Virus record (IMG/VR): IMGVR_UViG_3300038424_000251
Span: 301,300 to 365,299 of that record
Length of the DNA: 64,000 nt
Reading direction: 5' to 3' (one strand)
A program made the position numbers and the translations under genes. Shown here one piece after another: positions 2,792 through 56,703 of the stretch. Numbering within the stretch: the first letter of the stretch is position 1; each line of letters starts with the position of its first letter. The notes below the pieces were generated by a model, which searched no databases, had not been told where the DNA came from, and saw only the letters and a list, made by a program, of their open reading frames with translations.

Positions 2792-2896
2792 TACTTGCCA
2801 AAATGAATAACATATATTAAACTCAATTATATTAAAAATTTTGATATTTAATTAGTTATTCAACTATATATGACGCTGATAATCCTTATGTAATTA

Positions 2897-3034: not shown

Positions 3035-3037
3035 CAT

Positions 3038-3331
3038 ATGTTAATTTCTTTAGTTATATTGTTGTTAATATTATTAATAGTATCTGTTGTTTTCAACTTT
3101 CTCCTTTTAAAAGCAGGTGAACGACAACTTGTAATAAATGAATTGTATATAAGCTGGATATCTGAATGGAGAATACAAGTTCTAAAGACTTGGGCACATA
3201 TGAAAATGCTTGATGATAAGCAAATGTTTGAAAAAGACGATGAAGTTGGCATTGTATTTCAAGATATGAAAGACCTTATACAGAATCTTAATAATAGAAC
3301 TGAAGAAACCATAGAAGAAGAAGGAGAATAA
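3038..3331 (+). CDS. Small protein with an N-terminal membrane anchor
   Basis: About 24 hydrophobic N-terminal residues; tight operon spacing. Confidence 0.65.
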   Translation: MLISLVILLLILLIVSVVFNFLLLKAGERQLVINELYISWISEWRIQVLKTWAHMKMLDDKQMFEKDDEVGIVFQDMKDLIQNLNNRTEETIEEEGE

Positions 3332-3339
3332 AATTTTCT

Positions 3340-30523: not shown

Positions 30524-30540
30524 TGAGCCTATTTATAGGC

Positions 30541-33436: not shown

Positions 33437-35050
33437 ATGGTAAATCAACCTACATTAAGAGATATAATAAAAGAAGAGACAAAGAAGTGCATGGAAGACC
33501 CTGCATATTTCATGCGAAAATATGTAAAAATACAGCATCCAACGAGAGGAACTATACTTTTTGATTTATATCCATTTCAAGAAGACACACTTAAGGAGTT
33601 TGATTTACACCGATATATTCTTATACTTAAATCAAGACAATTGGGTATCACCACTTTAATTGCAGCATATTCTTTATGGATGTCCATTTTTAATAGTGAT
33701 AAAAATATTTTAATTATTTCAATAAAACAGGAAGTTTCAAAGGAAATTATCACCAAAGTTCGTTTTGCTAATGAGCATTTGCCATCGTGGTTAAAAGTAA
33801 AGGAAACCACAAATAATTATATGTCTCTTAGATTTGCAAATGGTTCTCAGGTTGCAGCTACGTCATCAGCTAAGGATGCTGGTCGTTCAAAAGCATTGTC
33901 TCTTTTGATTATTGATGAAGCAGCTTTTATTGAAGAGAGTGAAACTATATGGGCATCATCTTATAATACCTTATCAACCGGTGGTAAAGCTATTGTTCTT
34001 TCAACCCCGAATGGTGTTGGTAATTGGTTTCATAAAATGTGGGTGGATGCCGAAAGGAAGAAAAACGATTTTAAAACATTGAGACTTTCGTGGAATCTTC
34101 ACCCAGAACGTGACCAAAAATGGAGAGATGAGCAAACCAAACAACTTGGTGCTAAACTTGCTAGTCAGGAATGTGATGGAGATTTTCTATCATCAGGAGC
34201 AAACGTTGTAGATTTAATAACACTTAAATGGTACGAAGAAAATCCAGAAATGGTAAGAGATAGGAAAGAAGCAAGAAGTGGAGAAGCTTTATGGATATTT
34301 GAAGAACCAATGCAAGGCAAAGATTATCTTGTATGTGCTGACGTAGCTCGTGGTGATGGGTCTGATTTTTCTGCAGCTCATGTGTTTGATATAGAAACCT
34401 TGGAACAAGTTGTAGAATTTCAAGACCAAATAGGTACAAGAGAATTTGGCAATATGTTAGTGTATCTAGCTACCGAATATAATGATGCACTTCTGATTGT
34501 TGAACGTGAAAATATTGGTTGGGCCGTTCTTCAACAAATTATTGACCGCCAATATAAAAATACATTTTATTCTAATACTAATGACCCGAAGATAGCAGAT
34601 GTCTATCATAATATGTCAAATAGATATAATCGTGATGAAGCTAAATTACTTCCGGGATTTTCTACAACAATTAAAACAAGACCATTATTAGTTTCAAAGA
34701 TAGAGGAATATTTTAGAGAAAAGTTGGTTATTATTCATTCTATCAGATTGATTAATGAATTAAAAACTTTTATTTGGGAAAATGGAAAGGCACAAGCAGC
34801 TCAAAATTATAATGATGATTTAGTTTTGGCATTGGGTATGGGATTGTGGGTAAGAGATACAGCTTTAAGACTTAGAAATGAAAAAATGGTTTTAACAAAA
34901 AATATGTTAGATAAAATACACATCAATAAAAATGAAGATAGAACTCCCATTTATACTGCTAAAGTCCAATCAACAGGTCGTGACCAATGGCAAATGAAAT
35001 TTGGTAAAAGACCGGGTGATGTTGAATCCTTAACTTGGTTATTACGATAA
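33437..35050 (+). CDS. gp17: Terminase large subunit (T4 gp17-like)
   Basis: LYPFQ Q-motif, KSRQLGITT Walker A, LLIIDEAAF Walker B, STPNG, nuclease ADVARG..D and NDDLVLAL. Confidence 0.95.
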   Translation: MVNQPTLRDIIKEETKKCMEDPAYFMRKYVKIQHPTRGTILFDLYPFQEDTLKEFDLHRYILILKSRQLGITTLIAAYSLWMSIFNSDKNILIISIKQEVSKEIITKVRFANEHLPSWLKVKETTNNYMSLRFANGSQVAATSSAKDAGRSKALSLLIIDEAAFIEESETIWASSYNTLSTGGKAIVLSTPNGVGNWFHKMWVDAERKKNDFKTLRLSWNLHPERDQKWRDEQTKQLGAKLASQECDGDFLSSGANVVDLITLKWYEENPEMVRDRKEARSGEALWIFEEPMQGKDYLVCADVARGDGSDFSAAHVFDIETLEQVVEFQDQIGTREFGNMLVYLATEYNDALLIVERENIGWAVLQQIIDRQYKNTFYSNTNDPKIADVYHNMSNRYNRDEAKLLPGFSTTIKTRPLLVSKIEEYFREKLVIIHSIRLINELKTFIWENGKAQAAQNYNDDLVLALGMGLWVRDTALRLRNEKMVLTKNMLDKIHINKNEDRTPIYTAKVQSTGRDQWQMKFGKRPGDVESLTWLLR

Positions 35051-35286: not shown

Positions 35287-37368
35287 ATGCCTGATTCACC
35301 TCTAAGACCAGAAGTAAGAGTAGATAATGACGAAGTTGACATAAAGCAAAAGTCTTTATTTGCGCGTTTAAAGAAGTTGTTTTCTTCAGGCGTTGTAGTT
35401 CGTAACGTTGGTGGTAAAAAACTTAAAGTAAAGGATACCAGCGATTTGATGTACGCAACTGATAGAAACAGTTTGCGTGACCGTTTTAATCGTGTTCGTT
35501 CTACAGCTTATAATGCTTACACTAGAGATTTTTCTCTAGCTTACCAAGCAGCTCGTATTGACCTTTTTAGAGATTATGATACGATGGATATGGACCCTAT
35601 TATCGCATCAGCTTTGGATATTTACGCAGATGAATCGTTAACTGTTAATGAATTGGGAAAAATTTTAGTTGTTCATGCTGAAGATGAAAATATAAAGGGT
35701 ATTCTTACTAATCTTTTTTATGATGTTCTAAATATTGAACATAATCTTTGGTCTTGGACAAGGAATATGGCTAAATATGGTGATTTTTACATGCGCTTAT
35801 ATATTTCGCCTGAATATGGTGTTTATCAGATTGAACCAATTTCTTCCTATAATGTTGAACGGCTTGAAAATACAGACCCACTTAATAAAAATTATGTAAA
35901 GTTTCAAATAAGACCAACCGATACGTCACAAGTTGAAACATTGGAATTTTTTGAGTGTGCTCATTTTAGATTACTTTCTGATTCAAACTTCCTTCCTTAT
36001 GGTAAAGCTATGATTGAAGGAGCACGCCGTGTTTGGAAGCAATTATCTTTAATGGAAGACGCTATGTTGATTAATCGTATTATGCGTGCTCCAGAAAGAC
36101 GTATTTTCAAGTTGGATGTAGGTAACATTCCTCCACAAGATATTGATTCTTTTATAGAAAAGCAGGTAACTAAGTTAAAGAGAGTTCCATATGTTGACCC
36201 TCAAACAGGAGATTATAATCTCAGATTTAATCTTCAAAATATGACGGAAGACTATATTTTGCCTGTTCGTGGTAGTGATAGTGGAACTTCTATTGAAACT
36301 TTGAGTGGTATAGAATGGACGGGTATTGATGATATTCAATATTTACGTAACAAATTAATGGCAGCATTAAAGATTCCTAAAGCTTTCTTAGGTTATGAAG
36401 AAGAACTTTCAGGTAAAGCTACATTAGCATCAGAAGATGTAAGATTTGCTAGAACTATTCAACGTATTCAAAGAGTTCTTATATCAGAACTTGAAAAAAT
36501 TGCTATTGTTCATTTGTATTCACAAGGATATCGTGATGAAAGTTTGGTAAATTTTAAACTTGAACTTACTAATCCATCAACGATTTTTGAGAAGGAAAAG
36601 ATTGAAGTTTGGGGAAATAAAACGGAATTGGCTAAAAATATGATGGAAGCTAAATTATTTTCTAAGCAATGGATTTACAAAAACGTCTTTAATTTGTCCA
36701 AAGATGATTCAGAAGAATTACTTGACCAGATTGTTGAGGATTCCAAACAGGTGTGGAGATTTAAATCCATTGAAGAAGAGGGTAATGACCCTGCTAAACC
36801 ATTTCAGAAAATTAATCCAAAAGCTGAAGGTCTTCCACCGGGTGGTGGAGGATTGCCTGAATTGGGCGGCGGCGGATTACCTGAACTAGGCGGAGCTGGT
36901 GTCGGTGGATTACCTGAACTGGGACCTCCAGTAGGAGGCGGTGGAGCTGGCGTATTACCACCGTTACAAGAAGCAAAGATTAAAGGAGATACTAATTATG
37001 CTAAATGGAATCAAATGGCTATCAATAATACTGGAAGTATAGAAGAGGAACATGGTGAACATGCTGAAGATTATGAAAGGCCGTCGCAAGAAGGGGAACA
37101 TGATGCTCGCAAACAACACCGTTTTGGAGAAGACCCCCTCGGTGATTTGGAAAATAAAAGAAAACCGAGAAAAAGTAGTAATTCTCTGACACCAAAATGG
37201 GCAAAGAATTCTCCATTCAGTCTTGAAACACTTCAAAGAAGTAGTTTGATTAAGAATCTTAACTCTTATTTGGATAAATCAAAAAGAGAAAAAAAGGAAT
37301 TAATTAAGGAAGCAACGACAACAGGAAGCAAGTCAATGCTTGATGAAGATAACATAATTGATGAATAA
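35287..37368 (+). CDS. gp20: Portal protein (T4 gp20-like) with a long low-complexity C-terminal extension
   Basis: LMEDAMLINRIMRAPERRIFKLDVGNIP, EDYILPVRG, ALKIPKAFL, EDVRFARTIQRIQ. Confidence 0.92.
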   Translation: MPDSPLRPEVRVDNDEVDIKQKSLFARLKKLFSSGVVVRNVGGKKLKVKDTSDLMYATDRNSLRDRFNRVRSTAYNAYTRDFSLAYQAARIDLFRDYDTMDMDPIIASALDIYADESLTVNELGKILVVHAEDENIKGILTNLFYDVLNIEHNLWSWTRNMAKYGDFYMRLYISPEYGVYQIEPISSYNVERLENTDPLNKNYVKFQIRPTDTSQVETLEFFECAHFRLLSDSNFLPYGKAMIEGARRVWKQLSLMEDAMLINRIMRAPERRIFKLDVGNIPPQDIDSFIEKQVTKLKRVPYVDPQTGDYNLRFNLQNMTEDYILPVRGSDSGTSIETLSGIEWTGIDDIQYLRNKLMAALKIPKAFLGYEEELSGKATLASEDVRFARTIQRIQRVLISELEKIAIVHLYSQGYRDESLVNFKLELTNPSTIFEKEKIEVWGNKTELAKNMMEAKLFSKQWIYKNVFNLSKDDSEELLDQIVEDSKQVWRFKSIEEEGNDPAKPFQKINPKAEGLPPGGGGLPELGGGGLPELGGAGVGGLPELGPPVGGGGAGVLPPLQEAKIKGDTNYAKWNQMAINNTGSIEEEHGEHAEDYERPSQEGEHDARKQHRFGEDPLGDLENKRKPRKSSNSLTPKWAKNSPFSLETLQRSSLIKNLNSYLDKSKREKKELIKEATTTGSKSMLDEDNIIDE
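36841..36960 (+). repeat. GGGGLPEL repeats in the portal tail
   Basis: ggatt(g/a)cctgaa(t/c)t repeated three times within a Gly-rich, GC-rich stretch. Confidence 0.8.
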
Positions 37369-37429: not shown

Positions 37430-38302
37430 ATGCCTAAGAAAATGCGCCACTCAAAGTTTAGAAATACAGGTATTTTGTTTGAATTGTTGACACGACAAGT
37501 GACAGCAGATATTATTGCTGGTAAAGATGAGTCGGAAGCTAAAGATTTACTTTTTAAATACTTTAAAGAAAACACCGAATTGGGCCGAGAATGGCGTCTT
37601 TATAATTTTCTTTTGTCTGAAAAAATCAAGGATGAGCACCATGCGGATAGATTTTTGTCGGTTATTGTAGAACAACGAAAAAAACTTAGTAACGCTAAAT
37701 TAGCGAGGGAAAAATACGAATTAATTAAGGAAATTAAGGAACTTTATCCAATTAACGATTTTTTAAAAGCAAATATTAAAAATTATAGGACTTTAGCTTC
37801 CATATTCAAACTATTTGAAGATGATTCTTCCAAAGATTTGAAATTTGATGCAAAAGAAGTTTATCAAGCAAAAACGTGTATTATTGAAAACATTGTTGAT
37901 AGACCGAAGAAATCTGGTGAAGAGGATATTCTTAAGTTTTATGCACAACAAAATGAAGATGTTCGTCTTTTATCTTATCGTATATTGGTCGAAGGTATGA
38001 ATAAGAAATATAAAGATTTAGATGAAAATCAAAAGAATGTTCTTCGTGAATATATTAACAATATTTCCAATACTAATTCGCTTGGTGAATATATTGTAAA
38101 AGAAGTGGATAATGTAAAGAAACAATTGTGTGAATTATCATCAAAAATTAAGGATAATGATGTAATAAGAATAAAAATCAACGAAGTTGTTCGTCAACTG
38201 AATAAAGTAAAACCATTACCAAATAAAATAGTAAAGGATAATCAAGTTATGGTTGTTTTACTTTCTTATGAACTTTTGAAAGAAATTAAAAATCAACTTT
38301 AA
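37430..38302 (+). CDS. Head-module protein (putative prohead core/assembly)
   Basis: HSKFRNTGILFELLTRQ N-terminus, helical, between portal and protease, with its own TATTTATA. Confidence 0.55.
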   Translation: MPKKMRHSKFRNTGILFELLTRQVTADIIAGKDESEAKDLLFKYFKENTELGREWRLYNFLLSEKIKDEHHADRFLSVIVEQRKKLSNAKLAREKYELIKEIKELYPINDFLKANIKNYRTLASIFKLFEDDSSKDLKFDAKEVYQAKTCIIENIVDRPKKSGEEDILKFYAQQNEDVRLLSYRILVEGMNKKYKDLDENQKNVLREYINNISNTNSLGEYIVKEVDNVKKQLCELSSKIKDNDVIRIKINEVVRQLNKVKPLPNKIVKDNQVMVVLLSYELLKEIKNQL

Positions 38303-38307
38303 AAAAA

Positions 38308-40359
38308 GTGAAAAAATCTCAATTCCAATCATTGATTAAAAATGTGGTTGAAGAACAATTAGGACGATGGGTTTCTCCTAGTGAGTTAAATAAACAAACA
38401 CCACAACAGAAGGGAGTTGTGCAATATTTGGAAAAACTTAATTATCGTGTTACATCCACAATGCCTGCAGATACAACAGGTAAAACTGTAATAGTTATTA
38501 TGGATAAATCGGGTGGAAAATATGGCCATGAAGAAGCATTAGTAAATCCTAATGGTTCTGTGACTGGAAAGGCTGCATCTGATATTCCTATGAGCCTTAC
38601 GGGTGGAGGTTTAGATTTTTCTATTGTTGAAAAAAAATTACATCTTAAATTTCGGATTAAAAATATGGTAGAAAAAGCTATATTGAATGAGATACTTGGT
38701 GTTGGTCCAGATATTCATCAAGCTACAATAACTCAGAAACGAGCTATTAACACATTGAAAAAAATAGGATTTATTCTTAGAAATACTTATCCAACATCAG
38801 ATGGCGTAGGTATAATTCTCATAAGACATAAAGGGAAGCTTGGTAGTCCAGTAACAAGAGTTGCAAATATAAAACCAGATGGAAGTATTAATGAGCCACA
38901 TATAAATCTTAGTAAATATCTTAGTTTTGTTGGTGGTGGCGCTGGAGGTTCTGAACGTGGAGTTTCTTTACATGAATTGAGTAAACAAACATCATCACAA
39001 ACAAGAGCAGTTAATCATTTTGAAAGGAGAGGGTATCATATAAAATCTACGTCGCCTATAAGTGACAGAACTATAAATGTTATTATGACTAAATCGGGTG
39101 GTAGATTTGCCAGTGATGAAGTAATAATTGGACCAGATGGTTCTGTAAATGGAAAAGTATCTGCTACTCCTATTATTCATGAAAAAATGACTACGAGAGC
39201 CGACTTAGCAGCTGATGTGGGTCTTGGTGGCACAATGAAAGCTGTGAACGTTGCAGAAGAAAATGAGGAAAGAACATGCGACTGTGGTAGTGGATTACCT
39301 AGTAAATGGGAACGTGATGGTCAGGGTATTCCTTTGGTAAGAGCGTGTGATAAATGTAGAAAGCAGAAACTATCAAAATATCGTCCAGAAATTCTTAGAC
39401 CATATACTCAAGCAGATGTGGATGAACCGATTGAACCAGAAGATTATGAGGAACAAATGGGTGCAGTTGGTGGATATGCTACTCCATATGTGTTTAAAAA
39501 GAAAATAAGAGAAAAAATCGGTCCTGATGGAAAGTATCAAGATGATATGGAAAGTGGTGTTAGGTCAAAAAGAATTTCTGGTCTTTCTGAAATTGGTGTA
39601 GGTTTGACTACGGCTGCCGCAGTAGGGGGTATTGCTTTTATTTATATGTTATTAAACCGTATAATTAACCGTGGTTCTAACATTTACGCTGGTGGTGGTG
39701 AGTGGGAGAAAATAGAGATAACACAAGATAACATAAATATGATGCTTGATTTGATAAAAGCACATAATCCAAGACTAAAAGATGCAGATATTGAATTTGT
39801 TAAAAATCAAATTATGAATGAAATAAAGGGTGGTACAGTAAAAACCGTGGGAGATTTAAAAAAATATTTAAAAGCAAGAGAATTGGAATCGAGAAAAAAA
39901 TTAGAAGAAATACATAGGTCAGGACTCCATAGGTTAGGAATGGATTATTCTATAATTAAAAAAGTAAGAAATGCAGCTTCTAGATTTTTTAAGGTCCCTG
40001 TAGGAAATATTGAAAATATTAAAGTATTATATAAAATTACTCCTACTGATATTGTGTTTGAAATTATTTTGGGGCCACCAAGATGGGAAAGAAAATTTAT
40101 AAGATTTCATGGTATAAATAATCCTTTTGAAGTATGGGATGAAGAGCAAGAGAAATTTGTACCAACTCTTAAAACAGTTAGAAATTTTCCTCCAGAGGAA
40201 GAAGAAAATATTCAGGAAATGACAGCAACGGGTGCTATAGCTGGATATGCTACACCATTTGCATTTTCTAAAAAGAAAAGTGGTAGTCAAAGAGCATTAG
40301 ATGTAACTAAAAAGTTAGGATTTAAAGTAGTAGAAAGTATTTTAGAGAAGGTGAAGTAA
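38308..40359 (+). CDS. Multi-module putative internal head polyprotein
   Basis: MKKSQFQSLIKNVVEE start; three approximately 60-aa repeats; a CDC..CDKC module; a hydrophobic helix; two GYATP(Y/F)xF motifs. Confidence 0.6.
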   Translation: MKKSQFQSLIKNVVEEQLGRWVSPSELNKQTPQQKGVVQYLEKLNYRVTSTMPADTTGKTVIVIMDKSGGKYGHEEALVNPNGSVTGKAASDIPMSLTGGGLDFSIVEKKLHLKFRIKNMVEKAILNEILGVGPDIHQATITQKRAINTLKKIGFILRNTYPTSDGVGIILIRHKGKLGSPVTRVANIKPDGSINEPHINLSKYLSFVGGGAGGSERGVSLHELSKQTSSQTRAVNHFERRGYHIKSTSPISDRTINVIMTKSGGRFASDEVIIGPDGSVNGKVSATPIIHEKMTTRADLAADVGLGGTMKAVNVAEENEERTCDCGSGLPSKWERDGQGIPLVRACDKCRKQKLSKYRPEILRPYTQADVDEPIEPEDYEEQMGAVGGYATPYVFKKKIREKIGPDGKYQDDMESGVRSKRISGLSEIGVGLTTAAAVGGIAFIYMLLNRIINRGSNIYAGGGEWEKIEITQDNINMMLDLIKAHNPRLKDADIEFVKNQIMNEIKGGTVKTVGDLKKYLKARELESRKKLEEIHRSGLHRLGMDYSIIKKVRNAASRFFKVPVGNIENIKVLYKITPTDIVFEIILGPPRWERKFIRFHGINNPFEVWDEEQEKFVPTLKTVRNFPPEEEENIQEMTATGAIAGYATPFAFSKKKSGSQRALDVTKKLGFKVVESILEKVK

Positions 40360-40360
40360 T

Positions 40361-41491
40361 ATGAGTAAGAAAATTAAATTAAGAAATTTGTTGAATTTAA
40401 CTGAACAGGCTCCACAGCCACCAATGGCAAGCCCGGCTACTCCTGTGCCTGCTCCTGTTCTTCCCGCAGGTATGAGCGCAGGCGGTGCTGCGGCAGAAGA
40501 GGTACCACCAACCCCTCCACCTGCAGAAACATCACCTGAACCGGAAGACCCATCGGAATATGATTTCACTCGTGATTTTAGGGCATTTGAGGATAAAAAG
40601 AACAAGGCTGAATCTGATGCTAAGAAGGTTCTTTTGGATAAAATGAACAAAAGACTTTTGAACAAAACTGTTGTTGCTAATGCTTCACGCGGTTATGGAC
40701 AACCAAAAACCGATTACACTATAGAAAATATTAAGAAAATTAGTGTAGAATTTTGGTATAAGGATTATGTGGTGATAGCAACCGACCAAAATGATAAGAA
40801 ATACTTTTTAACTCCGGGTATAAATATTAAAATTGAAAGTGAAGGTTCTCAACCTGCTCCGGGTGCAGAAGAAAAACCAATAGCAGGTCCAGAAGTTCCA
40901 CCACAAGAACAACCAGCGGAACAACCACCAAAAGCTGGTGATGAAGAAGAACCAAATGTAGCATCTCCATCAGCACCCTCACCAGAAGAACAACCACCAC
41001 AGGCTGTTCCAATGGTTCCTACTCAAGAGCCAGCACCAATGGCTCCACAACAAACGGTGCCAAAACAAGCACCAGCTCCAGCAGAGCCATCGCTGGCAGA
41101 ACCAGAACCGGAGATTCCACATCGTAAAAAGAAAAAGAAACTTCCACCTGTAGCTGAATGGATTCAAAAAGATTTAAATATATTTCTTGTAGAATTTATG
41201 TCTGATAGTATAAAAGATGAAAATGGAAAAGTTAATTTTCTTCCTTATATAAAGAAAACATCAAAAATATTAGCTGAAAATGTAAATACTACCAAAATCA
41301 AGTACCAGTTATTGATTCCTGAAAATCATATGATAAATAATATAGATAACAGAGATATAAAATTGGCTGCAATTGATGCTATGAGACGACAAACGTATTA
41401 TGGCCAATATTCGAAAGGTTCGGTTGATATAGTTAAAAATGGTAGATATTATCTCTTGGAATATGTTAAAGAGATAGGATGGAACGTTTAA
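40361..41491 (+). CDS. Pro/Ala/Glu-rich head-module protein
   Basis: IKLRNLLNLTE N-terminus, PAE-rich linkers, directly upstream of the protease. Confidence 0.6.
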   Translation: MSKKIKLRNLLNLTEQAPQPPMASPATPVPAPVLPAGMSAGGAAAEEVPPTPPPAETSPEPEDPSEYDFTRDFRAFEDKKNKAESDAKKVLLDKMNKRLLNKTVVANASRGYGQPKTDYTIENIKKISVEFWYKDYVVIATDQNDKKYFLTPGINIKIESEGSQPAPGAEEKPIAGPEVPPQEQPAEQPPKAGDEEEPNVASPSAPSPEEQPPQAVPMVPTQEPAPMAPQQTVPKQAPAPAEPSLAEPEPEIPHRKKKKKLPPVAEWIQKDLNIFLVEFMSDSIKDENGKVNFLPYIKKTSKILAENVNTTKIKYQLLIPENHMINNIDNRDIKLAAIDAMRRQTYYGQYSKGSVDIVKNGRYYLLEYVKEIGWNV

Positions 41492-41492: not shown

Positions 41493-42122
41493 ATGAATAC
41501 TAAACAATTATTAGTTGATTGTATAACCTTTGAATTTATCAAAGATAATCTCTTTGAAGAAGCTATTCGTACTGATGGAAGACGATTGGTTGTCAAGGGT
41601 ATTTTACAACGAGCAAATATAAAAAATCAAAACGGTAGGCTATATAAGAAAGATGTACTTTTTCGTGAATCAAAAAAATATGAGGAAAACTTTGTAAAAG
41701 AAAGAAGAGCATTGGGAGAACTTGACCATCCAGAAAGCTCAGTTGTAAACTTACAAAATGTGTCTCATAATGTTGTAGAATTACATTGGGAAGGTGATGA
41801 CCTTATGGGAACTGTTGAAGTTTTACCTACTCCAAATGGAAATATTTTAAAGGAATTATTTAAAGCCAATATTCGACTTGGAATTTCCAGTCGTGGATTG
41901 GGAACAGTCAATAAAAGTATAAATGAAGATGCAGATGTGGTTCAAGATGATTTTGAACTTATAGCGTTTGATTTTGTATCAAATCCTAGTACAAGGGGCG
42001 CCTTCATGTTTCCATCGGGTACTCTTCAGGAAGGTGTTAAAACCACTATTCAAAATCCAATTACCCAAAAATGGGAAAGGGTTGAGAATATTGTAAGAGA
42101 TATTTTAACTGAAATTGAATAA
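41493..42122 (+). CDS. gp21: Prohead core protease (T4 gp21-like)
   Basis: KNQNGRLY, ALGELDHP (His), LGISSRGLG (Ser), FDFVSNPS. Confidence 0.93.
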   Translation: MNTKQLLVDCITFEFIKDNLFEEAIRTDGRRLVVKGILQRANIKNQNGRLYKKDVLFRESKKYEENFVKERRALGELDHPESSVVNLQNVSHNVVELHWEGDDLMGTVEVLPTPNGNILKELFKANIRLGISSRGLGTVNKSINEDADVVQDDFELIAFDFVSNPSTRGAFMFPSGTLQEGVKTTIQNPITQKWERVENIVRDILTEIE

Positions 42123-42423: not shown

Positions 42424-43689
42424 ATGAAGAAATCACAATTAAAATTGATAATTTCAGAAATTATAAAGCAGGCAAAATTACTTGAAAATGGGTTATCTCG
42501 TAATTGTACTGCTAATGATATTACATGGAAAGGAAAAAAAGGATATCAATGTTTAAATTGTGGTGCATGGGCTGAACATTCTTGGGATATTAAACATAAA
42601 AAACAAAATCCATTAGAAAAACCAAAATTTTTTGAAAATGATTTGAATGAAGCAATATCTCCAAAAAGTGTTGCTACAATTGAAAAATGGCGAAAAGAAG
42701 TCGGAGATAGACAAACTGGTGTAAAATTAATAGATACCGTTTTAGAAAGAAGACTTGGATTATTATCAGCAGATTTAGCTGATACTGCTATATTTGCAAA
42801 TGGATTGGATGCAATAGAAGAAGTGTTAAAGGAGAATAATTATGAAGCTGCTATTCGTCAAGCTATAGAAACTGCTAGGGAAATGATAGAGGATGAAGGT
42901 GGGGCAGGAATATGGGAAGAATACAGAAAATTACAAGAAGCTCAAGGATGGGCAGGTGCAGATGATAGATGGATTTCACACCCTATAACAAAAAAGGAAC
43001 CAAAATATTATAAAGAATATGGTGTAACATATTGTCATATTGACCTAAAAAAAGAAAAGTGTCCTCCGGGTATGAAAATTTTCCCCTACACAGAAGAACA
43101 TGTTCCTACAAAGAAAAAATTTCCAAGACAAATATGTTGTTATAATGAAAATGATTTTCGCAAATTATTAGGGCATTGGAATACAGCAGTGTGGAAATAC
43201 GAACCAACTAGTTCAATGTTACAAGAGAAAGTAAATAGGTCAGAATTAAAATTTATTATTAAAGAAATTGTCAGAGAAATTTATTCTGAACAATTTCGAC
43301 AAGATGAAATTAGTAATAAATGGAAAGCATTAGCAAGCGCCGCTTTGGTTGGATATGCTGGATTGCATACTCCTTTTGGAACAAAAACCGCTCAACATTG
43401 GAGTCAAACACCTGCTGGACAACAAATTGTAATGACGGCTAGACAAATGTGGAATCAAGTACCACCAGCTCAACGAACAGCAGAAAAGGCTAAACAAATA
43501 TGGGGTCAAATAATAAAACCGGGTCATATTGATATGCCCAATCCAAACGAACCATTACCATCAGAAAAAGGTATGAGTCCTTGGGATTTAGCTGGTAAAT
43601 ATACTGCAAGAAATGTGGACCTTACTCAAAAATTACAACCGTTTGTTAAACGTTATCTACCTCCTGTTAGTTCAAAGAATCCTTCTTAA
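42424..43689 (+). CDS. Multi-module putative internal head polyprotein
   Basis: MKKSQLKLIISEII start and internal RSELKFIIKEIVRE; modules bounded by LLE, LNE, LQE and LQE. Confidence 0.6.
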   Translation: MKKSQLKLIISEIIKQAKLLENGLSRNCTANDITWKGKKGYQCLNCGAWAEHSWDIKHKKQNPLEKPKFFENDLNEAISPKSVATIEKWRKEVGDRQTGVKLIDTVLERRLGLLSADLADTAIFANGLDAIEEVLKENNYEAAIRQAIETAREMIEDEGGAGIWEEYRKLQEAQGWAGADDRWISHPITKKEPKYYKEYGVTYCHIDLKKEKCPPGMKIFPYTEEHVPTKKKFPRQICCYNENDFRKLLGHWNTAVWKYEPTSSMLQEKVNRSELKFIIKEIVREIYSEQFRQDEISNKWKALASAALVGYAGLHTPFGTKTAQHWSQTPAGQQIVMTARQMWNQVPPAQRTAEKAKQIWGQIIKPGHIDMPNPNEPLPSEKGMSPWDLAGKYTARNVDLTQKLQPFVKRYLPPVSSKNPS

Positions 43690-43750
43690 TATATTCAAAA
43701 TATTCAGTTTAACATTAATTGCCGTTAAATGGATAAGATTTATCTTTTCA

Positions 43751-43779
43751 TTGACAATCCGCGAATTTTGTGGTATTAT
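43751..43779 (+). promoter_or_regulatory. sigma70-type promoter with extended -10
   Basis: TTGACA-17 nt-TATTAT with TG immediately upstream of the -10; ATG at 43789. Confidence 0.7.
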
Positions 43780-43788
43780 ATTTTTATT

Positions 43789-44253
43789 ATGAAAATTGAA
43801 TTCTATAGAATAGCAGAACCTTATGGAGATTTTTCCAATTTTTCAAGACATCCAATTGTTTTGAAAGGTAAAGTGTGGCCTACTACAGAGCATTATTTCC
43901 AATCACAGAAATTCGCTGGAACTGAACACGAAGAAGATGTAAGGCTTGCCAAAGGCCCGCGAGCGGCTGCTGAAATAGGACGTGACAGGAATCGTCCTTT
44001 AAGAGTTGATTGGGAACAAGTCAAAGAAAGCATTATGAAAGATGCTTTATTAGCTAAAATTGCACAATATCCTAAAATTAAGGAGCTTTTACTTTCTACT
44101 GGAGATGCAGAAATTGTTGAACATAGTTTCAAGGATAGATATTGGGCTGATGGTGGTGATGGTTCTGGAAAAAACAGATTGGGTATTCTTTGGATGGAAA
44201 TAAGAAAAGAGTTACAAGATGAAAAGAACCGAACGGCTCCGCAAGGAAGCTGA
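43789..44253 (+). CDS. NADAR (YbiA-like) family hydrolase
   Basis: FSNFS..WPTTEHYFQSQKF..DWEQVKESIM..AKIAQ..LLSTGDAEIVEHS..DRYWADGGDGSGKNRLG. Confidence 0.9.
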   Translation: MKIEFYRIAEPYGDFSNFSRHPIVLKGKVWPTTEHYFQSQKFAGTEHEEDVRLAKGPRAAAEIGRDRNRPLRVDWEQVKESIMKDALLAKIAQYPKIKELLLSTGDAEIVEHSFKDRYWADGGDGSGKNRLGILWMEIRKELQDEKNRTAPQGS

Positions 44254-44740
44254 AAAAACGATGGAAAAAATTCGCCTAATTGCGAGACATATTCGCAATG
44301 TGGAAGATAATTGCGTAATATTAGCAGAAAAATTATTGGCTTTGGGTGAAGTGGAATTAGCTAGAAATTTGGTTGCTAATGGAATGGTACACGATGCATC
44401 TAAATTTTTTGGTATAGAGTGGGAATATCTTTCTCTTGGAAATCCTGTAGAAGATGTTGCTAAATTGAAAATGAAATTGGCAATTCATCATCATAATTCT
44501 ACAAATAAACATCACCCCGAAGCTTGGCCGGGTGGCATTAAAGAAATGCCTGATGTATATTTGGCAGAATTTTGCTGTGATATTAAAGCAAGAAGTGAGG
44601 AATTTGGAACCGACTTACGAAATTGGATTGATGAAGTTGCAACCAAAAAATATTGCTTTACTAAAGAGGATGAAGTTTATAAAAAGGTAATGAAATTTGT
44701 TGATATGTTGTGTCCGCCGCCGTTTAAAGAAATTAAATAA
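44219..44740 (+). CDS. HD-domain-like protein (DUF5662-like)
   Basis: H..NV, HDASK, AIHHHNSTNKHHPE.W, MP...LAE..CD. Confidence 0.65.
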   Translation: MKRTERLRKEAEKTMEKIRLIARHIRNVEDNCVILAEKLLALGEVELARNLVANGMVHDASKFFGIEWEYLSLGNPVEDVAKLKMKLAIHHHNSTNKHHPEAWPGGIKEMPDVYLAEFCCDIKARSEEFGTDLRNWIDEVATKKYCFTKEDEVYKKVMKFVDMLCPPPFKEIK

Positions 44741-44769
44741 TTGACTTTTGTAATAAAGTGTGATATTTT
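44741..44769 (+). promoter_or_regulatory. sigma70-type promoter
   Basis: TTGACT-17 nt-TATTTT with extended TG; ATG at 44780. Confidence 0.45.
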
Positions 44770-44779
44770 CTTTATAATT

Positions 44780-45184
44780 ATGACACCAAAATCAATAAAC
44801 ATAGCAGTGGCAGAACAAATTGAAAAATTCGGTTCTGATAAAGTAGTTAATACAGTTGTGGAGAAATTAGTTAATGCTGAAGTAATTAAACGAGCTGATG
44901 CTCTTGCTGCAGCCATTAAGTTATCGGAAGAAACTCTCCGTGAAGCTCGCAAGGCTTCTAAACCAGACCAAGTAGCTATAAACGCTGATGGTAGTAGAAA
45001 TGAAACATTTTCTCCAAAAGCATTTGAAGCCAAGAAGAAATTGGATGAAAAACTAACCAAGATTGAAAACACAGTAGTAAATGCTACTGAAAAAGGTGAA
45101 TGGGGTAAATTGTATGAATTGGTAAAGGGCGGCGCTCAGCCAACAGCAGAAACCAAACCTGATGACGCCTCAACAAATAATTAA
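44780..45184 (+). CDS. Hypothetical helical protein
   Basis: Start placed at ATG 44780 because the TTG at 44741 is the -35 box. Confidence 0.6.
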   Translation: MTPKSINIAVAEQIEKFGSDKVVNTVVEKLVNAEVIKRADALAAAIKLSEETLREARKASKPDQVAINADGSRNETFSPKAFEAKKKLDEKLTKIENTVVNATEKGEWGKLYELVKGGAQPTAETKPDDASTNN

Positions 45185-45506
45185 TAGAATTCAAAAAGAA
45201 GCAGACGCTCGATTGGGTGATACCATCGAGCGTTTGTTTTTAATTTTACGAAATCGCCATACACACCAATGCTGGCGGAAGGAATGTGATTGTGAATATT
45301 GTCGGTTTATCAATGGTAAATATGTTCATGAAAAACTTGTATTACATGCATTGAAAAGACGAATTAGAGAACTTGATGATTATTGGAATGCATCTGATTA
45401 TGAATTACAGTTATTATGGCAATTACAAGCAGACCAATGGAAACAGAAAGCGAAAATTCGTTTATTGAAAAATCATAAAAAGGAATTACACGAAAATATT
45501 GTCTAA
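45162..45506 (+). CDS. Hypothetical protein with a Cys cluster
   Basis: HQC...CDCEYC; overlapping operon arrangement. Confidence 0.5.
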   Translation: MTPQQIINRIQKEADARLGDTIERLFLILRNRHTHQCWRKECDCEYCRFINGKYVHEKLVLHALKRRIRELDDYWNASDYELQLLWQLQADQWKQKAKIRLLKNHKKELHENIV

Positions 45507-45676
45507 TGGAAAAATATAATAAAATTTTTAAGAGAATGTTAAAATATCATTTTCATAGAGGATTGTGTTATCCATTGGATATAAACTGGTATGGAAATGA
45601 TGGTCATTATTTAAAAATAATTTTTTACATAGAACTCTTGGACAATCTTAGGGAAGTGATTCTTAAGAACGCTTGA
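45506..45676 (+). CDS. Small hypothetical protein (56 aa, not in ORF track)
   Basis: TAATG stop/start overlap; MEKYNKIFKRMLKYHF..VILKNA*. Confidence 0.45.
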   Translation: MEKYNKIFKRMLKYHFHRGLCYPLDINWYGNDGHYLKIIFYIELLDNLREVILKNA

Positions 45677-45700
45677 CATTTATGCTTTCTCTGATAAACT
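45673..45700 (+). promoter_or_regulatory. sigma70-type promoter of the nucleotidyltransferase gene
   Basis: TTGACA-16 nt-TAAACT with extended TG; ATG 6 nt downstream. Confidence 0.6.
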
Positions 45701-45706
45701 ATCTAT

Positions 45707-52766: not shown

Positions 52767-54614
52767 ATGGAAAATATTAAATCATTGTTAACAAACACTC
52801 TCAATCCTCAAGCTCGTTTGATGCAGGAAACCCGTGGTCTTGTGACCAAGTGGGATAAAACCGGTCTTCTTGATGGTATTAAGAGTGATATTGAGAAGTC
52901 CAATATGTCGGTCTTGCTCGAAAATCAGGCTAAACAACTGATTGAAGAAGCAACTGCTACTGGTACTTCCGCAAACTCTGAACAGTGGGCTGGCGTAGCT
53001 CTCCCGTTGGTCAGACGTGTATTTGCTGAATTTGCTGCGAAGGAATTCGTATCCGTTCAGCCTATGAACCTCCCATCTGGTCTTGTGTTCTACTTGGATT
53101 TCAAGTATGGCTCACCTCACGGTGGTAATCCTGCCGATACATCAGGTTCATATTATCAATCATTGTTCGGTGGTACTGGTGCTAAACTAGGTTCTACTGA
53201 TACATTCGGCGGTGGTCTATACGGCGCAGGCCGATATGGTTACACCATTAATCAAAAAGCTGCAACTGCAGTAACATTTAGTGCAGCTACATCAACATTG
53301 GAAGATATTGACTGGTTGGCTAATTATTATACTCAATATGCCTCATCTGGTTCAGTACAAGGAATTTTGAATAGTATTTCAGCATCGTTTAATAACAATC
53401 AGCTTATTACTTTTAAAACTTCAAATTTTTATAGTACTACGACTAGTCAAGGTAATCCGTTTGACCCATTAGCTGTTCGTTCATTCATGCCATATAGCAT
53501 TGTTACTGGATCTACAGCAGGGCTAACTGCTTCATTTCAATCAGGTAGTGCTGCCGGCTCCGGTCCTATGTATTTCCCACCATTTACAAAATTTGTAGTG
53601 GGTACTGGTATCGATGCTGGTGGTGCTCAGGTTGGTGAAATCCAGTTTGTCTTATCAGCTTCGGCTGGTGCTACTGGTTCCTTCACTGGTAATATTTATT
53701 ACACAGTTCAACCAAGCCCACAAGACCGTGGTGACTTCGAAGATAATCCAAACAATGCTAATGCTACTGGTACTGATACGGGATTTGTTTATGGAACAGG
53801 TAAGTCAACTACTGATACTGGTCTTAACAAGGATATCGGTATTCCAGAAGTAAACTTGCAACTTAACTCCGAACCAATCGTAGCTAAGACACGTAAGTTG
53901 AAAGCTGTCTGGACTCCTGAACTTGCTCAAGACTTGAATGCTTATCATAGCATTGACGCAGAAGCAGAATTGACTGCTCTGTTGTCTGAATATGTTTCAA
54001 TGGAAATTGACCTTGAAATTCTTGATATGTTGATTAACGCAGTATTACCTATCAATATTGAACGTTGGAGTGCAAGGCTTAATACGGAAATAGTTCCTAC
54101 TGGAACTGGTACTTACCAATTCGTTCAAACAACAACGGCAGGTACTGGTGGTTACTACACCAAGGCAACATGGTACCAAACTCTTGGTAACAAGATTCAA
54201 AAGGTATCCAACAGGATTCACCAATTGACGCTTCGTGGTGGTGCTAACTTCATGGTTATCTCCCCAACAGTGGCAACTGTTCTTGAATCTATTCCGGGAT
54301 TCGTAGTGAATACCGATGGCGACCAAGCAAAGTTTGCTATGGGCGTTTCAAGGGTTGGTTCATTTGCTTCAAGGTTCCAAGTTTACAAGAACCCATATAT
54401 GACTGATAATATCATTCTAATGGGCTTCCGTGGTAATAACTTCTTGGAAACTGGTGCAGTATATGCTCCATACATTCCATTGGTTCAGACACCGTTAGTG
54501 TATGACCCTGTGAACTTCACGCCAAGACGTGGTGTAATGACCCGTTACGCGAAGAAGATTGTTCGTCCTGAATTCTATGGCAAGATTTACATTGCCGATT
54601 TGGACACGGTATAA
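52767..54614 (+). CDS. gp23: Major capsid protein (T4 gp23-like)
   Basis: VSVQPMNLPSGLVFYLDF, AKTRKLKAVWTPELAQDLNAYH..DAEAEL, YAPYIPL, FTPRRGVMTRYA. Confidence 0.96.
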   Translation: MENIKSLLTNTLNPQARLMQETRGLVTKWDKTGLLDGIKSDIEKSNMSVLLENQAKQLIEEATATGTSANSEQWAGVALPLVRRVFAEFAAKEFVSVQPMNLPSGLVFYLDFKYGSPHGGNPADTSGSYYQSLFGGTGAKLGSTDTFGGGLYGAGRYGYTINQKAATAVTFSAATSTLEDIDWLANYYTQYASSGSVQGILNSISASFNNNQLITFKTSNFYSTTTSQGNPFDPLAVRSFMPYSIVTGSTAGLTASFQSGSAAGSGPMYFPPFTKFVVGTGIDAGGAQVGEIQFVLSASAGATGSFTGNIYYTVQPSPQDRGDFEDNPNNANATGTDTGFVYGTGKSTTDTGLNKDIGIPEVNLQLNSEPIVAKTRKLKAVWTPELAQDLNAYHSIDAEAELTALLSEYVSMEIDLEILDMLINAVLPINIERWSARLNTEIVPTGTGTYQFVQTTTAGTGGYYTKATWYQTLGNKIQKVSNRIHQLTLRGGANFMVISPTVATVLESIPGFVVNTDGDQAKFAMGVSRVGSFASRFQVYKNPYMTDNIILMGFRGNNFLETGAVYAPYIPLVQTPLVYDPVNFTPRRGVMTRYAKKIVRPEFYGKIYIADLDTV

Positions 54615-56313: not shown

Positions 56314-56703
56314 ATGAAGCAAAGTCAACTTAAACAACTTATTAAAGAGATTGTATATTGTATTTTTAAAGAACAGTTTGGTGAACCAACTCCACAAAAG
56401 TTAATACCTGATGATGAAGAAGAACTATGGAAAATAGTACAGAGTTTACCTATTGATTATTCAATTCAATTTTCAATTTTTCATCCAATATCAAAAGGGT
56501 TGTTGATTATACTTCATAGTAGTAAGGGAAATGTATTTGCAGCTACCAGTCTTGGTGGGTTAAAACATGCTGGTCCACCTGATGGAAAATGGCATGTACC
56601 GGGTGAGAAAATTTTAAGAATTTTAGTAAAGGATGTATATGATTATGGTGAAAATAATGATGTATATTATTCCATAGTTAAAACTACTCCAACTAACCTT
56701 TAA
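56314..56703 (+). CDS. Putative internal head protein
   Basis: MKQSQLKQLIKEIV..FKE N-terminus; own TATTTATA. Confidence 0.6.
   Translation: MKQSQLKQLIKEIVYCIFKEQFGEPTPQKLIPDDEEELWKIVQSLPIDYSIQFSIFHPISKGLLIILHSSKGNVFAATSLGGLKHAGPPDGKWHVPGEKILRILVKDVYDYGENNDVYYSIVKTTPTNL

What the first reader, a model, noticed from the sequence alone, without database searches (positions are those of the whole stretch)
38308..40359. Beads-on-a-string protein: three repeats, Zn module, TM helix and a duplicated GYATP motif
Seen: three copies of an approximately 60-aa domain (Q..(A/V)V..(L/F)E..(G/N)Y....P....V.M.KSGG....V.P.GSV.G), then CDCGSG..ACDKC, then GAVGGYATPYVF, then a hydrophobic helix, then EMTATGAIAGYATPFAF. 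Module edges coincide with LNE, LHE, IHE, LSE, LEE and IQE. Inference: independent mini-genes have accreted into one precursor between a targeting helix and a conserved terminal GYATP peptide.
Basis: partly seen in the sequence, partly recalled or inferred. Interest (0 to 1): 0.7.

Follow-up and report, generated by a model that had tools for sequence, protein, structure and literature searches.

The report
Phage head polyprotein with swappable modules
This gene of a 365-kb uncultured peat-wetland phage sits between the capsid portal and capsid protease genes and strings many small swappable protein modules together, separated by the protease's likely cutting sites, so it looks like a natural way to load variable cargo into a virus head.

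Summary
ORF 38308-40359 (683 aa) holds three homologous ~65-aa domains, a 4-Cys module, a hydrophobic helix and a duplicated GYATP motif.

Context explains it. The gene lies between a T4-type portal and an S77 prohead protease in a 365-kb phage. T4's protease cuts after (L/I)-x-E. Seven of ten such sites here fall in disordered linkers.

Positional orthologues range from 55 to 1031 aa. Flanking genes stay 85-91% identical and collinear, while this gene is a mosaic. All keep an N-terminal leader and the GY peptide.

- Cultured Flavobacterium phage immuto has only leader plus GY peptide (73 aa).
- A 484-kb relative has an array of separate leader-bearing mini-genes at the same place.
- P0001 keeps a fossil internal leader.
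- The Zn module exists as free 57-100-aa phage genes.
- The same leader heads at least 10 unrelated proteins of this genome, recalling T4's capsid-targeting sequence.

Best reading: a leader-targeted head-internal polyprotein, cut by the prohead protease into small proteins. Cleavage, packaging and module functions are inferred, not shown. I rate it a new variant of a known kind.

The parts
38308..38370 (+). N-terminal leader (aa 1-21, MKKSQFQSLIKNVVEE..). It is an amphipathic helix and the proposed capsid-targeting propeptide, ending in V-V-E / V-E-E.
   Evidence: AF2 predicts a helix at aa 3-18. The same leader stands at the N-terminus of at least 10 ORFs of the genome and of nearly all family members.
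38371..38631 (+). Module A1 (aa 22-108), first copy of the helix plus three strands domain. It ends in I-V-E108.
   Evidence: Also present in P0006 and P0008.
38632..38691 (+). Internal fossil leader (aa 109-128, KKLHLKFRIKNMVEKAILNE). It ends in L-N-E128.
   Evidence: Hit by the HMM built from N-terminal leaders. The true N-termini of other members align here. The DNA repeat with the 5' leader is 45 nt at 71%. AF2 predicts a helix at aa 111-128.
38692..38976 (+). Module A2 (aa 129-223), second copy, helix-three strands-helix. It ends in L-H-E223.
   Evidence: The best structural match is HicA at Z 6.0, which is weak.
38977..39183 (+). Module A3 (aa 224-292), third copy. It ends in I-H-E292.
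39184..39258 (+). Conserved spacer peptide ending in the family-wide motif (A/F)VN(V/I/L)xE (aa 293-317).
   Evidence: pLDDT is below 50.
39259..39513 (+). Zn1 module (4 Cys, CDCGSG..CDKC, then DVDEPIEPE) followed by internal GYATP motif 1 and KKK-I-R-E402 (aa 318-402). Probably one product.
   Evidence: pLDDT is about 95 for the Zn part and below 50 for the GY part. More than 60 stand-alone homologues were found. SEC-C hits are sub-threshold. There is no hydrophobic-x-E between Zn1 and GY.
39514..39591 (+). Conserved PDGxY..DMES..SGLSE spacer peptide (aa 403-428). It ends in L-S-E428.
   Evidence: It is also present in the 124-aa short member P0093.
39592..39909 (+). Gly/Ala-rich hydrophobic helix (aa 429-456) plus helical module H (aa 457-534). 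The hydrophobic stretch begins directly after the predicted cut.
   Evidence: Hydropathy peak. pLDDT is about 90. The unit is duplicated or triplicated in P0005 and P0002 and absent from P0008 and P0010-P0012.
39910..40218 (+). Module K (aa 535-637), a five-strand beta domain. It ends in the invariant I-Q-E637.
   Evidence: No fold match was found.
40219..40359 (+). C-terminal GY peptide (aa 638-683, plus the stop codon). It has net charge +6 and pI 10.1 and is the most conserved part of the family.
   Evidence: A4 alignment invariants. 47 of 48 copies are preceded by hydrophobic-x-E. hhalign against immuto gp072 gives E 1e-13. Charge.
35287..37368 (+). T4-type portal protein (gp20).
   Evidence: PF07230, E 1.8e-67. 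phrog_213.
37430..38302 (+). Conserved 290-aa helical protein that always stands directly upstream. It is rich in (L/I)xE (14 against 5.6 expected) and is a likely protease-degraded core protein.
40361..41491 (+). Conserved 376-aa Pro/Glu/Ala-rich protein between the polyprotein and the protease.
41493..42122 (+). Prohead core serine protease (T4 gp21 type, Peptidase_S77). The motifs GELDHP and SSRGLG match those of T4.
   Evidence: PF03420, E 8.7e-27. phrog_207, E 1.8e-52. Motifs by eye against T4 gp21.
52767..54614 (+). Major capsid protein (gp23 type). A conserved L-I-E-E|A site lies at aa 58-61, placed like the T4 gp23 maturation site.
   Evidence: PF07068. N-terminus and T4 comparison. 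E61 and L58 are invariant in 42 homologues.

Best explanation
The gene encodes a head-internal polyprotein of a T4-like jumbo phage.

Proposed mechanism:
- The N-terminal amphipathic leader brings the precursor into the assembling prohead core, as the capsid-targeting sequence does for T4 internal proteins.
- After the shell closes, the adjacent S77 (gp21-type) prohead protease cuts after hydrophobic-x-Glu motifs in the flexible linkers.
- This removes the leaders and releases about 8-10 small products: three A domains, a Zn-module-GY product, short conserved spacer peptides, a hydrophobic-helix/H unit, the K domain and a basic 46-aa GY peptide.

Proposed evolution:
- The ancestral gene is a roughly 73-aa leader plus GY-peptide gene, fixed between the portal and protease genes.
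- In this jumbo-phage clade, independent leader-bearing mini-genes and free phage mini-proteins were inserted between leader and GY peptide. Each kept a protease site, so the locus works as a cargo-accreting cassette.

What is shown: architecture, synteny, mosaicism, the shared leader, stand-alone modules, and placement of sites in linkers.

What is inferred: encapsidation, cleavage, and any later role of the products, such as travelling into the host with the DNA or the hydrophobic unit inserting into membrane.
For: Context:
- Portal PF07230 and protease PF03420 flank the gene.
- Terminase, gp23 and a gp22-like acidic protein are nearby.
- Established knowledge, not tested here: T4 gp21 cuts after Glu in L/I-x-E and degrades core proteins. 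T4 internal proteins share an N-terminal targeting sequence ending in I-A-E. Papers read give the CTS and the cleavage C-terminal to Glu.

Site placement:
- 7 of 10 (L/I)xE sites lie in pLDDT<50 linkers, P 5.7e-4.
- Homology breakpoints among 12 relatives lie within 3 aa of a site twice as often as random positions: 0.176 against 0.081 +/- 0.012.
- Nearly every module junction in all 12 relatives is [LIVM]xE.
- The Glu before the C-terminal GY peptide is invariant, and 47 of 48 copies have hydrophobic-x-E there.
- The MCP keeps an L-I-E-E|A site where T4 gp23 is cut.

Leader:
- At least 10 unrelated ORFs of the genome start with it, one of them a serine hydrolase whose domain starts at aa 28.
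- All of them carry [LIV]xE at positions 10-12 and/or 14-16 (read).

Evolution:
- The gene order portal, ~290-aa ORF, this gene, ~375-aa ORF, protease is kept while gene length runs from 55 to 1031 aa.
- Neighbours are 85-91% identical in a single HSP. This gene is mosaic.
- Immuto gp072 is leader plus GY peptide only (hhalign E 1e-13).
- LR756508 has separate leader-bearing mini-genes at the locus.
- P0001 keeps an internal fossil leader.
- Of 50 complete IMG/VR proteins, 14 are minimal, 22 are extended after the GY peptide, 13 have modules inserted before it, and one fits none of these.
- The Zn module exists as a free gene.

Folding: independent domains, low pTM and disordered GY stretches.
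Against: - There is no experimental evidence of packaging or cleavage for any member. No virion proteome was found.
- (L/I)xE is not enriched overall in the protein: 10 against 8 expected.
- Three of the ten sites lie inside confident structure (INE196, LHE223, LEE534).
- Many junctions use V or M at P3, which is not documented for T4 gp21.
- The leader has no sequence similarity to the T4 targeting sequence. The parallel is one of form only.
- No module has a recognised function. Pfam, PHROGs, PDB, BFVD and the Atlas gave nothing significant.
- The hydrophobic helix could mean a membrane-anchored assembly factor rather than a capsid cargo.
Confidence: 0.65

Rival explanations
1. It is a degradable scaffold or core filler. 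The protein is a prohead core component like T4 gp22, gp67 or gp68. It is cut to pieces and expelled before DNA packaging. The variable modules would only add bulk or tune core size for a large capsid and would have no function afterwards.
For: - The position matches gp67/gp68 between portal and protease.
- Cleavage motifs are dense in the neighbouring 290-aa protein.
- T4 core proteins are cut to short fragments (paper read).
- No module has a recognisable activity.
- Module-rich versions occur in the jumbo clade, and minimal ones in phages of about 160 kb.
Against: - Modules are well-folded, distinct domains (pLDDT 80-97) rather than coiled-coil or acidic filler.
- One of them is a free-standing small gene in early or accessory regions of unrelated phages.
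- Content differs greatly between phages whose capsid genes are 85-90% identical. That is hard to reconcile with a size-setting role.
- Several predicted products are basic, like T4 internal proteins that stay with the DNA.
- A separate gp22-like acidic scaffold candidate exists at 51132-52724. It was identified by eye only and has no Pfam match.
Confidence: 0.2
2. It is an unprocessed multidomain, membrane-anchored assembly factor. The hydrophobic helix would tether the protein, and through it the portal-core initiation complex, to the inner membrane, as assembly of T4 proheads starts at the membrane. On this reading the x-E motifs are only linker composition.
For: - The hydrophobic helix spans about 24 residues.
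- T4 heads nucleate on the inner membrane (paper read).
- The gene is next to the portal gene.
Against: - The helix module is absent from many orthologues (P0008, P0010-P0012, all minimal forms) and triplicated in P0002. It therefore cannot be the family's core function.
- All Glu residues taken together show no linker preference, but (L/I)xE sites do.
- The invariant Glu before the GY peptide is not explained.
Confidence: 0.12
3. It is an artefact: neighbouring small genes were fused by assembly or sequencing error, or an ORF was over-called.
For: A related phage has separate mini-genes at the locus.
Against: - The identical open frame is found in contigs of independent peat and wetland runs with no indels or joints, and in several IMG/VR records.
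- More than 13 distinct long orthologues are also open.
- The internal leader has no start codon in front of it.
Confidence: 0.02

Closest known systems
T4 internal proteins IPI, IPII, IPIII (and Alt), with their capsid-targeting sequence and processing by gp21
   Same: - Unrelated proteins of one phage share a short N-terminal leader ending in a hydrophobic-x-Glu site.
- A gp21-type protease is encoded in the head module.
- Several predicted products are small and basic.
- The cargo set is highly variable between related phages.
   Different: - The leader has a different sequence and is longer: about 16-21 aa against 10.
- Many cargo domains are joined in one precursor, with internal sites and fossil leaders, instead of one gene per protein.
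- Packaging and cleavage are not shown here.
T4 prohead core proteins gp67 and gp68
   Same: - The genomic position is the same, between portal gene 20 and protease gene 21.
- The minimal family members are similar in size (55-124 aa against 80 and 141 aa).
- They are expected substrates of the protease.
   Different: There is no detectable homology: hhalign probability 0.1-0.2% and no PHROG match. T4 has no GY motif and no modular expansion.
Polyvalent proteins of phages and conjugative elements (Iyer, Burroughs, Anand, de Souza, Aravind 2017, PMC5512222)
   Same: - Several disparate domains sit in one polypeptide encoded next to portal and head genes.
- Domains also occur solo.
- The proteins are proposed to be packaged and delivered with the DNA.
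- Processing into parts has been suggested.
   Different: - Those proteins are built from recognisable enzymatic and binding domains, often with their own peptidase domain or a MuF/portal fusion.
- Here the modules are 60-100-aa domains of unknown function.
- The delimiters are prohead-protease-type sites.
- Both termini are fixed elements: leader and GY peptide.
Herpesvirus scaffold protein and assemblin
   Same: - The protease belongs to the fold group that includes assemblin (paper read).
- The substrate has an invariant cut site a few tens of residues from a highly conserved C-terminal tail. In herpesviruses that tail binds the major capsid protein (own knowledge).
   Different: - Binding of the GY peptide to the capsid protein is not supported by anything here. 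The complex prediction gave no verdict.
- In 22 of the 50 complete IMG/VR proteins analysed, the GY peptide follows the leader and is not C-terminal.
Processed ejection and inner-body proteins of phiKZ-like giant phages (phiKZ, 201phi2-1, SPN3US)
   Same: Giant-phage head proteins have N-terminal propeptides removed, often at several sites, by a gp21-related protease that cuts after Glu (paper read).
   Different: - Those phages use an S/A/G-x-E motif and an S80 protease.
- Each protein is a separate gene.
- No shuffling polyprotein has been described there.

Membership tests
Substrates of the T4-type prohead protease (Peptidase S77) | A cognate S77 protease is encoded in the same head module | tested here: met
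   PF03420, E 8.7e-27. phrog_207, E 1.8e-52. It lies at 41493-42122, 1.1 kb downstream.
Substrates of the T4-type prohead protease (Peptidase S77) | (L/I)-x-E sites lie in accessible positions | tested here: met
   - 7 of 10 sites lie in pLDDT<50 linkers, P 5.7e-4.
- Junction motifs are conserved across the family.
- The overall count is not enriched.
Substrates of the T4-type prohead protease (Peptidase S77) | Cleavage is demonstrated (mature N-termini in virions) | not testable with these tools
   No proteome of any member was found.
T4 capsid-targeting-sequence (CTS) proteins | A short N-terminal sequence is shared by otherwise unrelated proteins of the phage and ends in a protease site | tested here: met
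   At least 10 ORFs of the 365-kb genome share the leader. One is a Ser_hydrolase, PF06821. [LIV]xE stands at positions 10-12 and/or 14-16.
T4 capsid-targeting-sequence (CTS) proteins | Sequence similarity to the T4 CTS (MKTYQEFIAE) | tested here: not met
   By eye only: both start MK and end in hydrophobic-x-E, but they are otherwise unlike. No PHROG or Pfam match links P0001 to T4 internal proteins.
T4 capsid-targeting-sequence (CTS) proteins | The leader is sufficient for encapsidation | not testable with these tools
   This needs a reporter fusion in an infected host.
T4 gp67 / gp68 prohead core proteins | Homology to gp67 or gp68 | tested here: not met
   hhalign of the GY-peptide profile against gp68 gave probability 0.2%, and against gp67 0.1%.
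T4 gp67 / gp68 prohead core proteins | Position between portal and protease genes | tested here: met
Polyvalent proteins (Iyer et al. 2017) | Two to fifteen disparate domains in one polypeptide, with solo versions elsewhere, in a phage head-gene context | tested here: met
   The module map shows at least 7 module types in P0001 and more than 15 in the family. Solo Zn modules exist. Head-gene context.
Polyvalent proteins (Iyer et al. 2017) | Contains the enzymatic or effector domains catalogued for the class (MuF, MPTase, ART, ParB-like and others) | tested here: not met
   No Pfam domain at E<=0.1 in P0001. The modules searched alone gave only sub-threshold SEC-C hits.
SEC-C-type zinc-binding motif (PF02810), for the Zn module | A match above Pfam's gathering score | tested here: inconclusive
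   Solo homologues score 15-16 bits against a cut-off of 20.4. The P0001 module itself gave no SEC-C hit. The four Cys are conserved.
HicA / dsRBD-like fold, for the A modules | Structural match well above background, and the catalytic His of HicA | tested here: inconclusive
   - Best VIA-align match is HicA3 4p78_D at Z 6.0, with 59 of 66 residues aligned. That is below the Z of about 8 that the tool says is needed.
- Foldseek top hit is YpeB/PepSY at E 2.7e-3.
- There is no Pfam HicA hit.
- The catalytic residues were not examined.

The most novel reading that the evidence does not exclude
The portal-protease interval of this large clade of T4-like phages is an evolvable cargo-loading cassette. 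A fixed leader and a fixed GY peptide frame a slot into which free phage mini-genes are captured. Each is bounded by a prohead-protease site. One precursor would therefore deliver an equimolar, strain-specific cocktail of small proteins into the capsid and, with the DNA, into the host. Maturation cleavage would also unmask a Gly/Ala-rich hydrophobic N-terminus on the helix-H unit, which could then act as a membrane-inserting ejection protein, in the manner of cleavage-activated penetration peptides of animal viruses.
Probability: 0.3. Interest if true: 0.8.

Novelty: new variant of a known kind. Interest (0 to 1): 0.68.

Why it matters
Proteins packaged in phage heads are the first phage molecules to meet the host, and in T4 they include anti-restriction factors. 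How giant phages recruit and diversify such cargo is poorly understood.

This locus offers three things.
- A simple, sequence-readable rule (leader, site-delimited modules, GY peptide) that predicts a whole set of candidate virion-internal proteins in an uncultured clade. IMG/VR alone holds 244 such loci.
- An evolutionary series from a 73-aa gene, through arrays of mini-genes, to 1031-aa polyproteins. It shows gene fusion creating a polyprotein in a tailed dsDNA phage, where polyproteins are unusual.
- A cultured entry point, Flavobacterium phage immuto gp072, in which the leader and cleavage predictions can be tested directly.

If confirmed, the leader and the site grammar could serve as a natural design for loading several proteins into capsids.

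Tried and rejected
- Pfam and PHROGs on the whole protein gave no family. Pfam on single modules gave only sub-threshold SEC-C and Antiterm hits.
- tblastn against 50,697 phage records found only the Zn module, in three records of N4-like Rhizobium phages. With the GY peptide alone it found weak hits that led to immuto gp072 and LR756508.
- Fold searches of both AF2 models against PDB (Foldseek and VIA-align) and BFVD gave nothing significant.
  - The A domains gave HicA at Z 6.0 and PepSY/YpeB at E 2.7e-3.
  - The helical part gave generic hairpins at Z up to 7.7.
  - Orbivirus VP5, a cyanophage pre-ejectosome chain and pore-forming toxins appear among those generic rows, and I draw nothing from them.
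- ESM Atlas feature search gave no usable hit.
- The GY-peptide profile found nothing against PDB sequences.
- Homology of the GY peptide to T4 gp68 or gp67 is rejected.
- A first MAFFT alignment of 117 fragments (A1) was badly misaligned and was discarded.
It was sent again with whole proteins and the tool's own cut.
- Complex prediction of the C-terminal GY peptide with the major capsid protein gave no verdict: score 0.00, controls not run. This is no evidence either way.
- I looked for module-skipping variants in public runs. There are no joints or indels in the gene. One contig of a co-occurring relative joins the sequence at 40077.
- I considered whether the gene is a tail or decoration protein. 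Nothing supports that.
Full report
**What is there.**
- ORF 38308-40359 (+ strand, GTG start) encodes 683 aa, stored as P0001.
- The window is the last 64 kb of a 365,299-bp virus record with 33% G+C.
- That record recurs in peat and wetland metagenomes. Independent runs carry contigs identical to the gene, without indels or joints, so the long frame is not an assembly artefact.

- Three homologous domains lie at aa 22-108, 129-223 and 224-292. A1/A3 share 41% identity (E 4e-18, z = 25 against shuffles). A2/A3 give z = 11.8 and A1/A2 z = 6.8.
- A 4-Cys module follows, then GYATP at aa 389 and 646, which is unique in the genome, and a 24-residue hydrophobic stretch from aa 429.
- The duplications are visible in the DNA too: A1/A3 87 nt at 74%, and the GY motifs 54 nt at 72%.

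**Context.**
- Upstream lie a large terminase (33437-35050) and a T4-type portal (35287-37368; PF07230, E 1.8e-67).
- Downstream, after one 376-aa gene, lies a prohead core serine protease of the T4 gp21 type (41493-42122; PF03420, E 8.7e-27; phrog_207, E 1.8e-52).
- A gp23-type capsid protein is at 52767-54614. It is preceded by an acidic protein that resembles gp22 by eye.
- In T4 the interval between gene 20 and gene 21 holds the small core proteins gp67 and gp68.
- From established knowledge, T4 gp21 cuts after Glu in L/I-x-E. [quoted passage not shown] The internal proteins enter the core through a shared N-terminal capsid-targeting sequence. The papers read state the CTS, the substrates and the cleavage C-terminal to Glu.
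- The capsid protein here keeps an L-I-E-E|A site (L58 and E61 invariant in 42 homologues) placed like the T4 gp23 maturation site L-T-E|A. It is therefore reasonable to expect the same specificity.

**Is the placement of sites more than chance?**
- The count alone is not: 10 sites against 8 expected.
- Their positions are. AF2 models of aa 1-320 and 293-683 give confident separate domains (pLDDT 80-97) joined by stretches below 50, with pTM 0.34 and 0.44.
- Seven of the ten (L/I)xE sites lie in those stretches, which hold 18.7% of residues (P = 5.7e-4). For Glu in general the figure is 12 of 52.
- Among 12 relatives, ends of local alignments fall within 3 aa of a site twice as often as random positions: 0.176 against 0.081 +/- 0.012. 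These breakpoints are not independent.
- Cutting every relative at [LIVM]xE reproduces the module boundaries almost everywhere.
- The Glu in front of the C-terminal GY peptide is invariant, and 47 of 48 copies have hydrophobic-x-E there.
- Exceptions: LEE534 sits in a confident helix, INE196 and LHE223 sit in structure, and Zn1 is joined to the first GY motif by E-E-Q. Zn1 plus GY is therefore probably one product, cut only after KKK-I-R-E402.

**The family is a mosaic.**
- A word-indexed search found 11 relatives of 394-1031 aa. An exhaustive HMMER search found 446 representatives at E<=0.001.
- A module map shows one constant N-terminal leader and one constant C-terminal peptide of about 45 aa, with different sets, orders and copy numbers of modules between them.
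  - The helix-H-K unit is triplicated in P0002.
  - The helix is missing from P0008 and P0010-P0012.
  - At least eight further module types occur that P0001 lacks.
- These are positional orthologues. In every contig with enough flank the order is terminase, portal, ~290-aa ORF, this gene, ~375-aa ORF, protease.
- Against two close relatives, the terminase, portal, 290-aa protein and protease are 85-91% identical in one collinear alignment. This gene breaks into 4-5 pieces with a best piece of 32-47%.

**How it grew.**
- The GY-peptide profile detects a 73-aa ORF (gp072) at the same position in the cultured Flavobacterium phage immuto (hhalign probability 98%, E 1e-13). That ORF is nothing but a leader ending V-L-E-E followed by the GY peptide.
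- In the 484-kb uncultured phage LR756508, the interval between an intein-bearing portal and an intein-bearing protease holds six separate small genes that each start with a leader of the same kind. One of them carries the GY peptide.
- P0001, P0006 and P0008 contain an internal copy of the leader without a start codon (aa 109-128 in P0001). The true N-termini of most other members align to that internal copy, not to residue 1.
- A scan of IMG/VR found 244 loci. Fifty complete distinct proteins were analysed:
  - 14 are minimal (55-77 aa);
  - 22 have the GY peptide right after the leader with extra sequence behind it (99-371 aa);
  - 13 have modules inserted between the leader and a C-terminal GY peptide (182-747 aa). 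These are the members whose portal is closest to the window's;
  - one fits none of these classes.
  
  All of them follow the 290-aa gene directly.
- The Zn module occurs as a complete 57-100-aa gene in more than 60 representatives. These lie among other small phage genes, and one is in the early region of an N4-like Rhizobium phage.

**The leader.**
- An HMM of family N-termini and a pattern search find the same leader (MKKSQLK.LIKEI.. and variants) at the start of at least 10 ORFs spread over the genome. Two more lie in the window, at 42424 and 56314.
- One is a serine hydrolase whose Pfam domain begins at residue 28. The others have no family.
- Each leader carries [LIV]xE at positions 10-12 and/or 14-16.
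- This is the form of the T4 capsid-targeting sequence, but not its sequence.

**What I think it does.**
- The precursor is brought into the prohead core by its leader.
- The neighbouring protease then cuts it in the linkers into small products:
  - A1, A2 and A3 (about 70-95 aa each);
  - Zn1-GY (85 aa);
  - two conserved spacer peptides (25-26 aa each);
  - the helix-H unit (106 aa), which would start with its Gly/Ala-rich hydrophobic stretch;
  - K (103 aa);
  - a basic 46-aa GY peptide (net +6).
- A2, A3, the leaders and the GY peptide are basic, as are the T4 internal proteins (own knowledge).
- Which pieces stay in the head, what the GY peptide docks to, and whether any piece acts in the host are all open.
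- My confidence is about 0.95 in the mosaic architecture and its origin by fusion, about 0.65-0.7 in processing by the prohead protease, about 0.6 in the leader as a capsid-targeting signal, and lower for delivery into the host.

**Module function.** Nothing significant was found.
- The A domain (helix, three strands, sometimes a second helix) best matches HicA at Z 6.0 and PepSY/YpeB at E 2.7e-3. Both are below what the tools call reliable.
- The Zn module gives sub-threshold SEC-C hits.
- The H and K modules have no match. The Atlas gave none.
- A prediction of the GY peptide against the capsid protein gave no verdict.

**Comparison with what is known.**
- It works like T4 internal proteins and core proteins, with a targeting leader and gp21-type processing. 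It resembles in concept the polyvalent proteins of Iyer et al. 2017.
- It is not a sequence member of gp67, gp68 or the IP families, and it contains none of the catalogued polyvalent-protein domains.
- The new points are:
  - a polyprotein built of site-delimited, shuffling small modules in a tailed dsDNA phage;
  - its fixed frame of leader and GY peptide;
  - the visible series from a single small gene to a mini-gene array to a fusion.
- I rate it a new variant of a known kind.

Noticed in passing
window 42424-43689 (+), 421 aa: This protein starts with the same leader and has a second, internal leader copy at aa 270-285 (..SELKFIIKEIVRE..). About 25 aa later comes a degenerate GY-like motif (LVGYAGLHTPFG). 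It may be a second fused product of the same kind. A 424-aa ORF sits at the corresponding position in L008.
   Followed up: partly
G000 11297-11734, 29730-30191, 30194-30952, 87067-88428 (-), 88442-89959, 258740-259435, 284162-285112; window 56314-56703: At least 10 ORFs across the 365-kb genome begin with the MKKSQLK.LIKEI-type leader. One (284162-285112) is a serine hydrolase, PF06821. The rest have no Pfam family. Together they form a predicted set of capsid-targeted proteins.
   Followed up: partly
window 37430-38302 (+), 290 aa: This helical Lys/Glu-rich protein has 14 (L/I)xE motifs against 5.6 expected. It always stands directly upstream of the GY gene, often overlapping its start, from immuto-like phages to the jumbo clade. 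It has no Pfam or PHROG family.
   Followed up: partly
window 40361-41491 (+), 376 aa: This protein has Pro/Glu/Ala-rich low-complexity stretches around a small globular part and is conserved in position before the protease. The 107-aa ORF on the opposite strand at 40342-40665 mirrors this biased stretch and is probably not a gene.
   Followed up: no
window 51132-52724 (+), 530 aa: This very acidic protein sits just upstream of the capsid gene. Its N-terminus and helical C-terminus look like T4 gp22 scaffold by eye, but it has no Pfam match. It coincides with a local rise in G+C to 0.38-0.41.
   Followed up: partly
L021 (LR756508.1) 119-3472 and 10029-11753: In the 484-kb relative, the portal (1117 aa) and the prohead protease (574 aa) ORFs are far longer than their homologues here. 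They carry inserted segments that look like inteins or homing-endonuclease inserts. A GIY-YIG/NUMOD-type gene also sits in the head module of L011.
   Followed up: no
whole record; MCP homologues P0162-P0280: The capsid protein has thousands of relatives at 65-85% identity. Several are on contigs of 340-372 kb, which points to a large uncultured clade of ~350-kb T4-like phages. The nearest cultured capsids are Flavobacterium phage immuto and Microcystis phage Mel-JY01 (about 58-61% over part of the protein), so a Bacteroidota host is plausible but not shown.
   Followed up: partly
window 40077, run X9: A 235-nt contig from a wetland run matches the window only from 40077 onward. Upstream it continues with a different K-module sequence (..DIVFEVVLGE..), as expected from a co-occurring strain with another module variant.
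   Followed up: no
window 43729-46933: Between the protease and the capsid genes lie a DUF5662/phrog_1017 protein (43729-44253) and an RlaP-type nucleotidyltransferase (45707-46933). Relatives also carry NADAR and an epimerase there. These are non-structural genes inside the head module.
   Followed up: no
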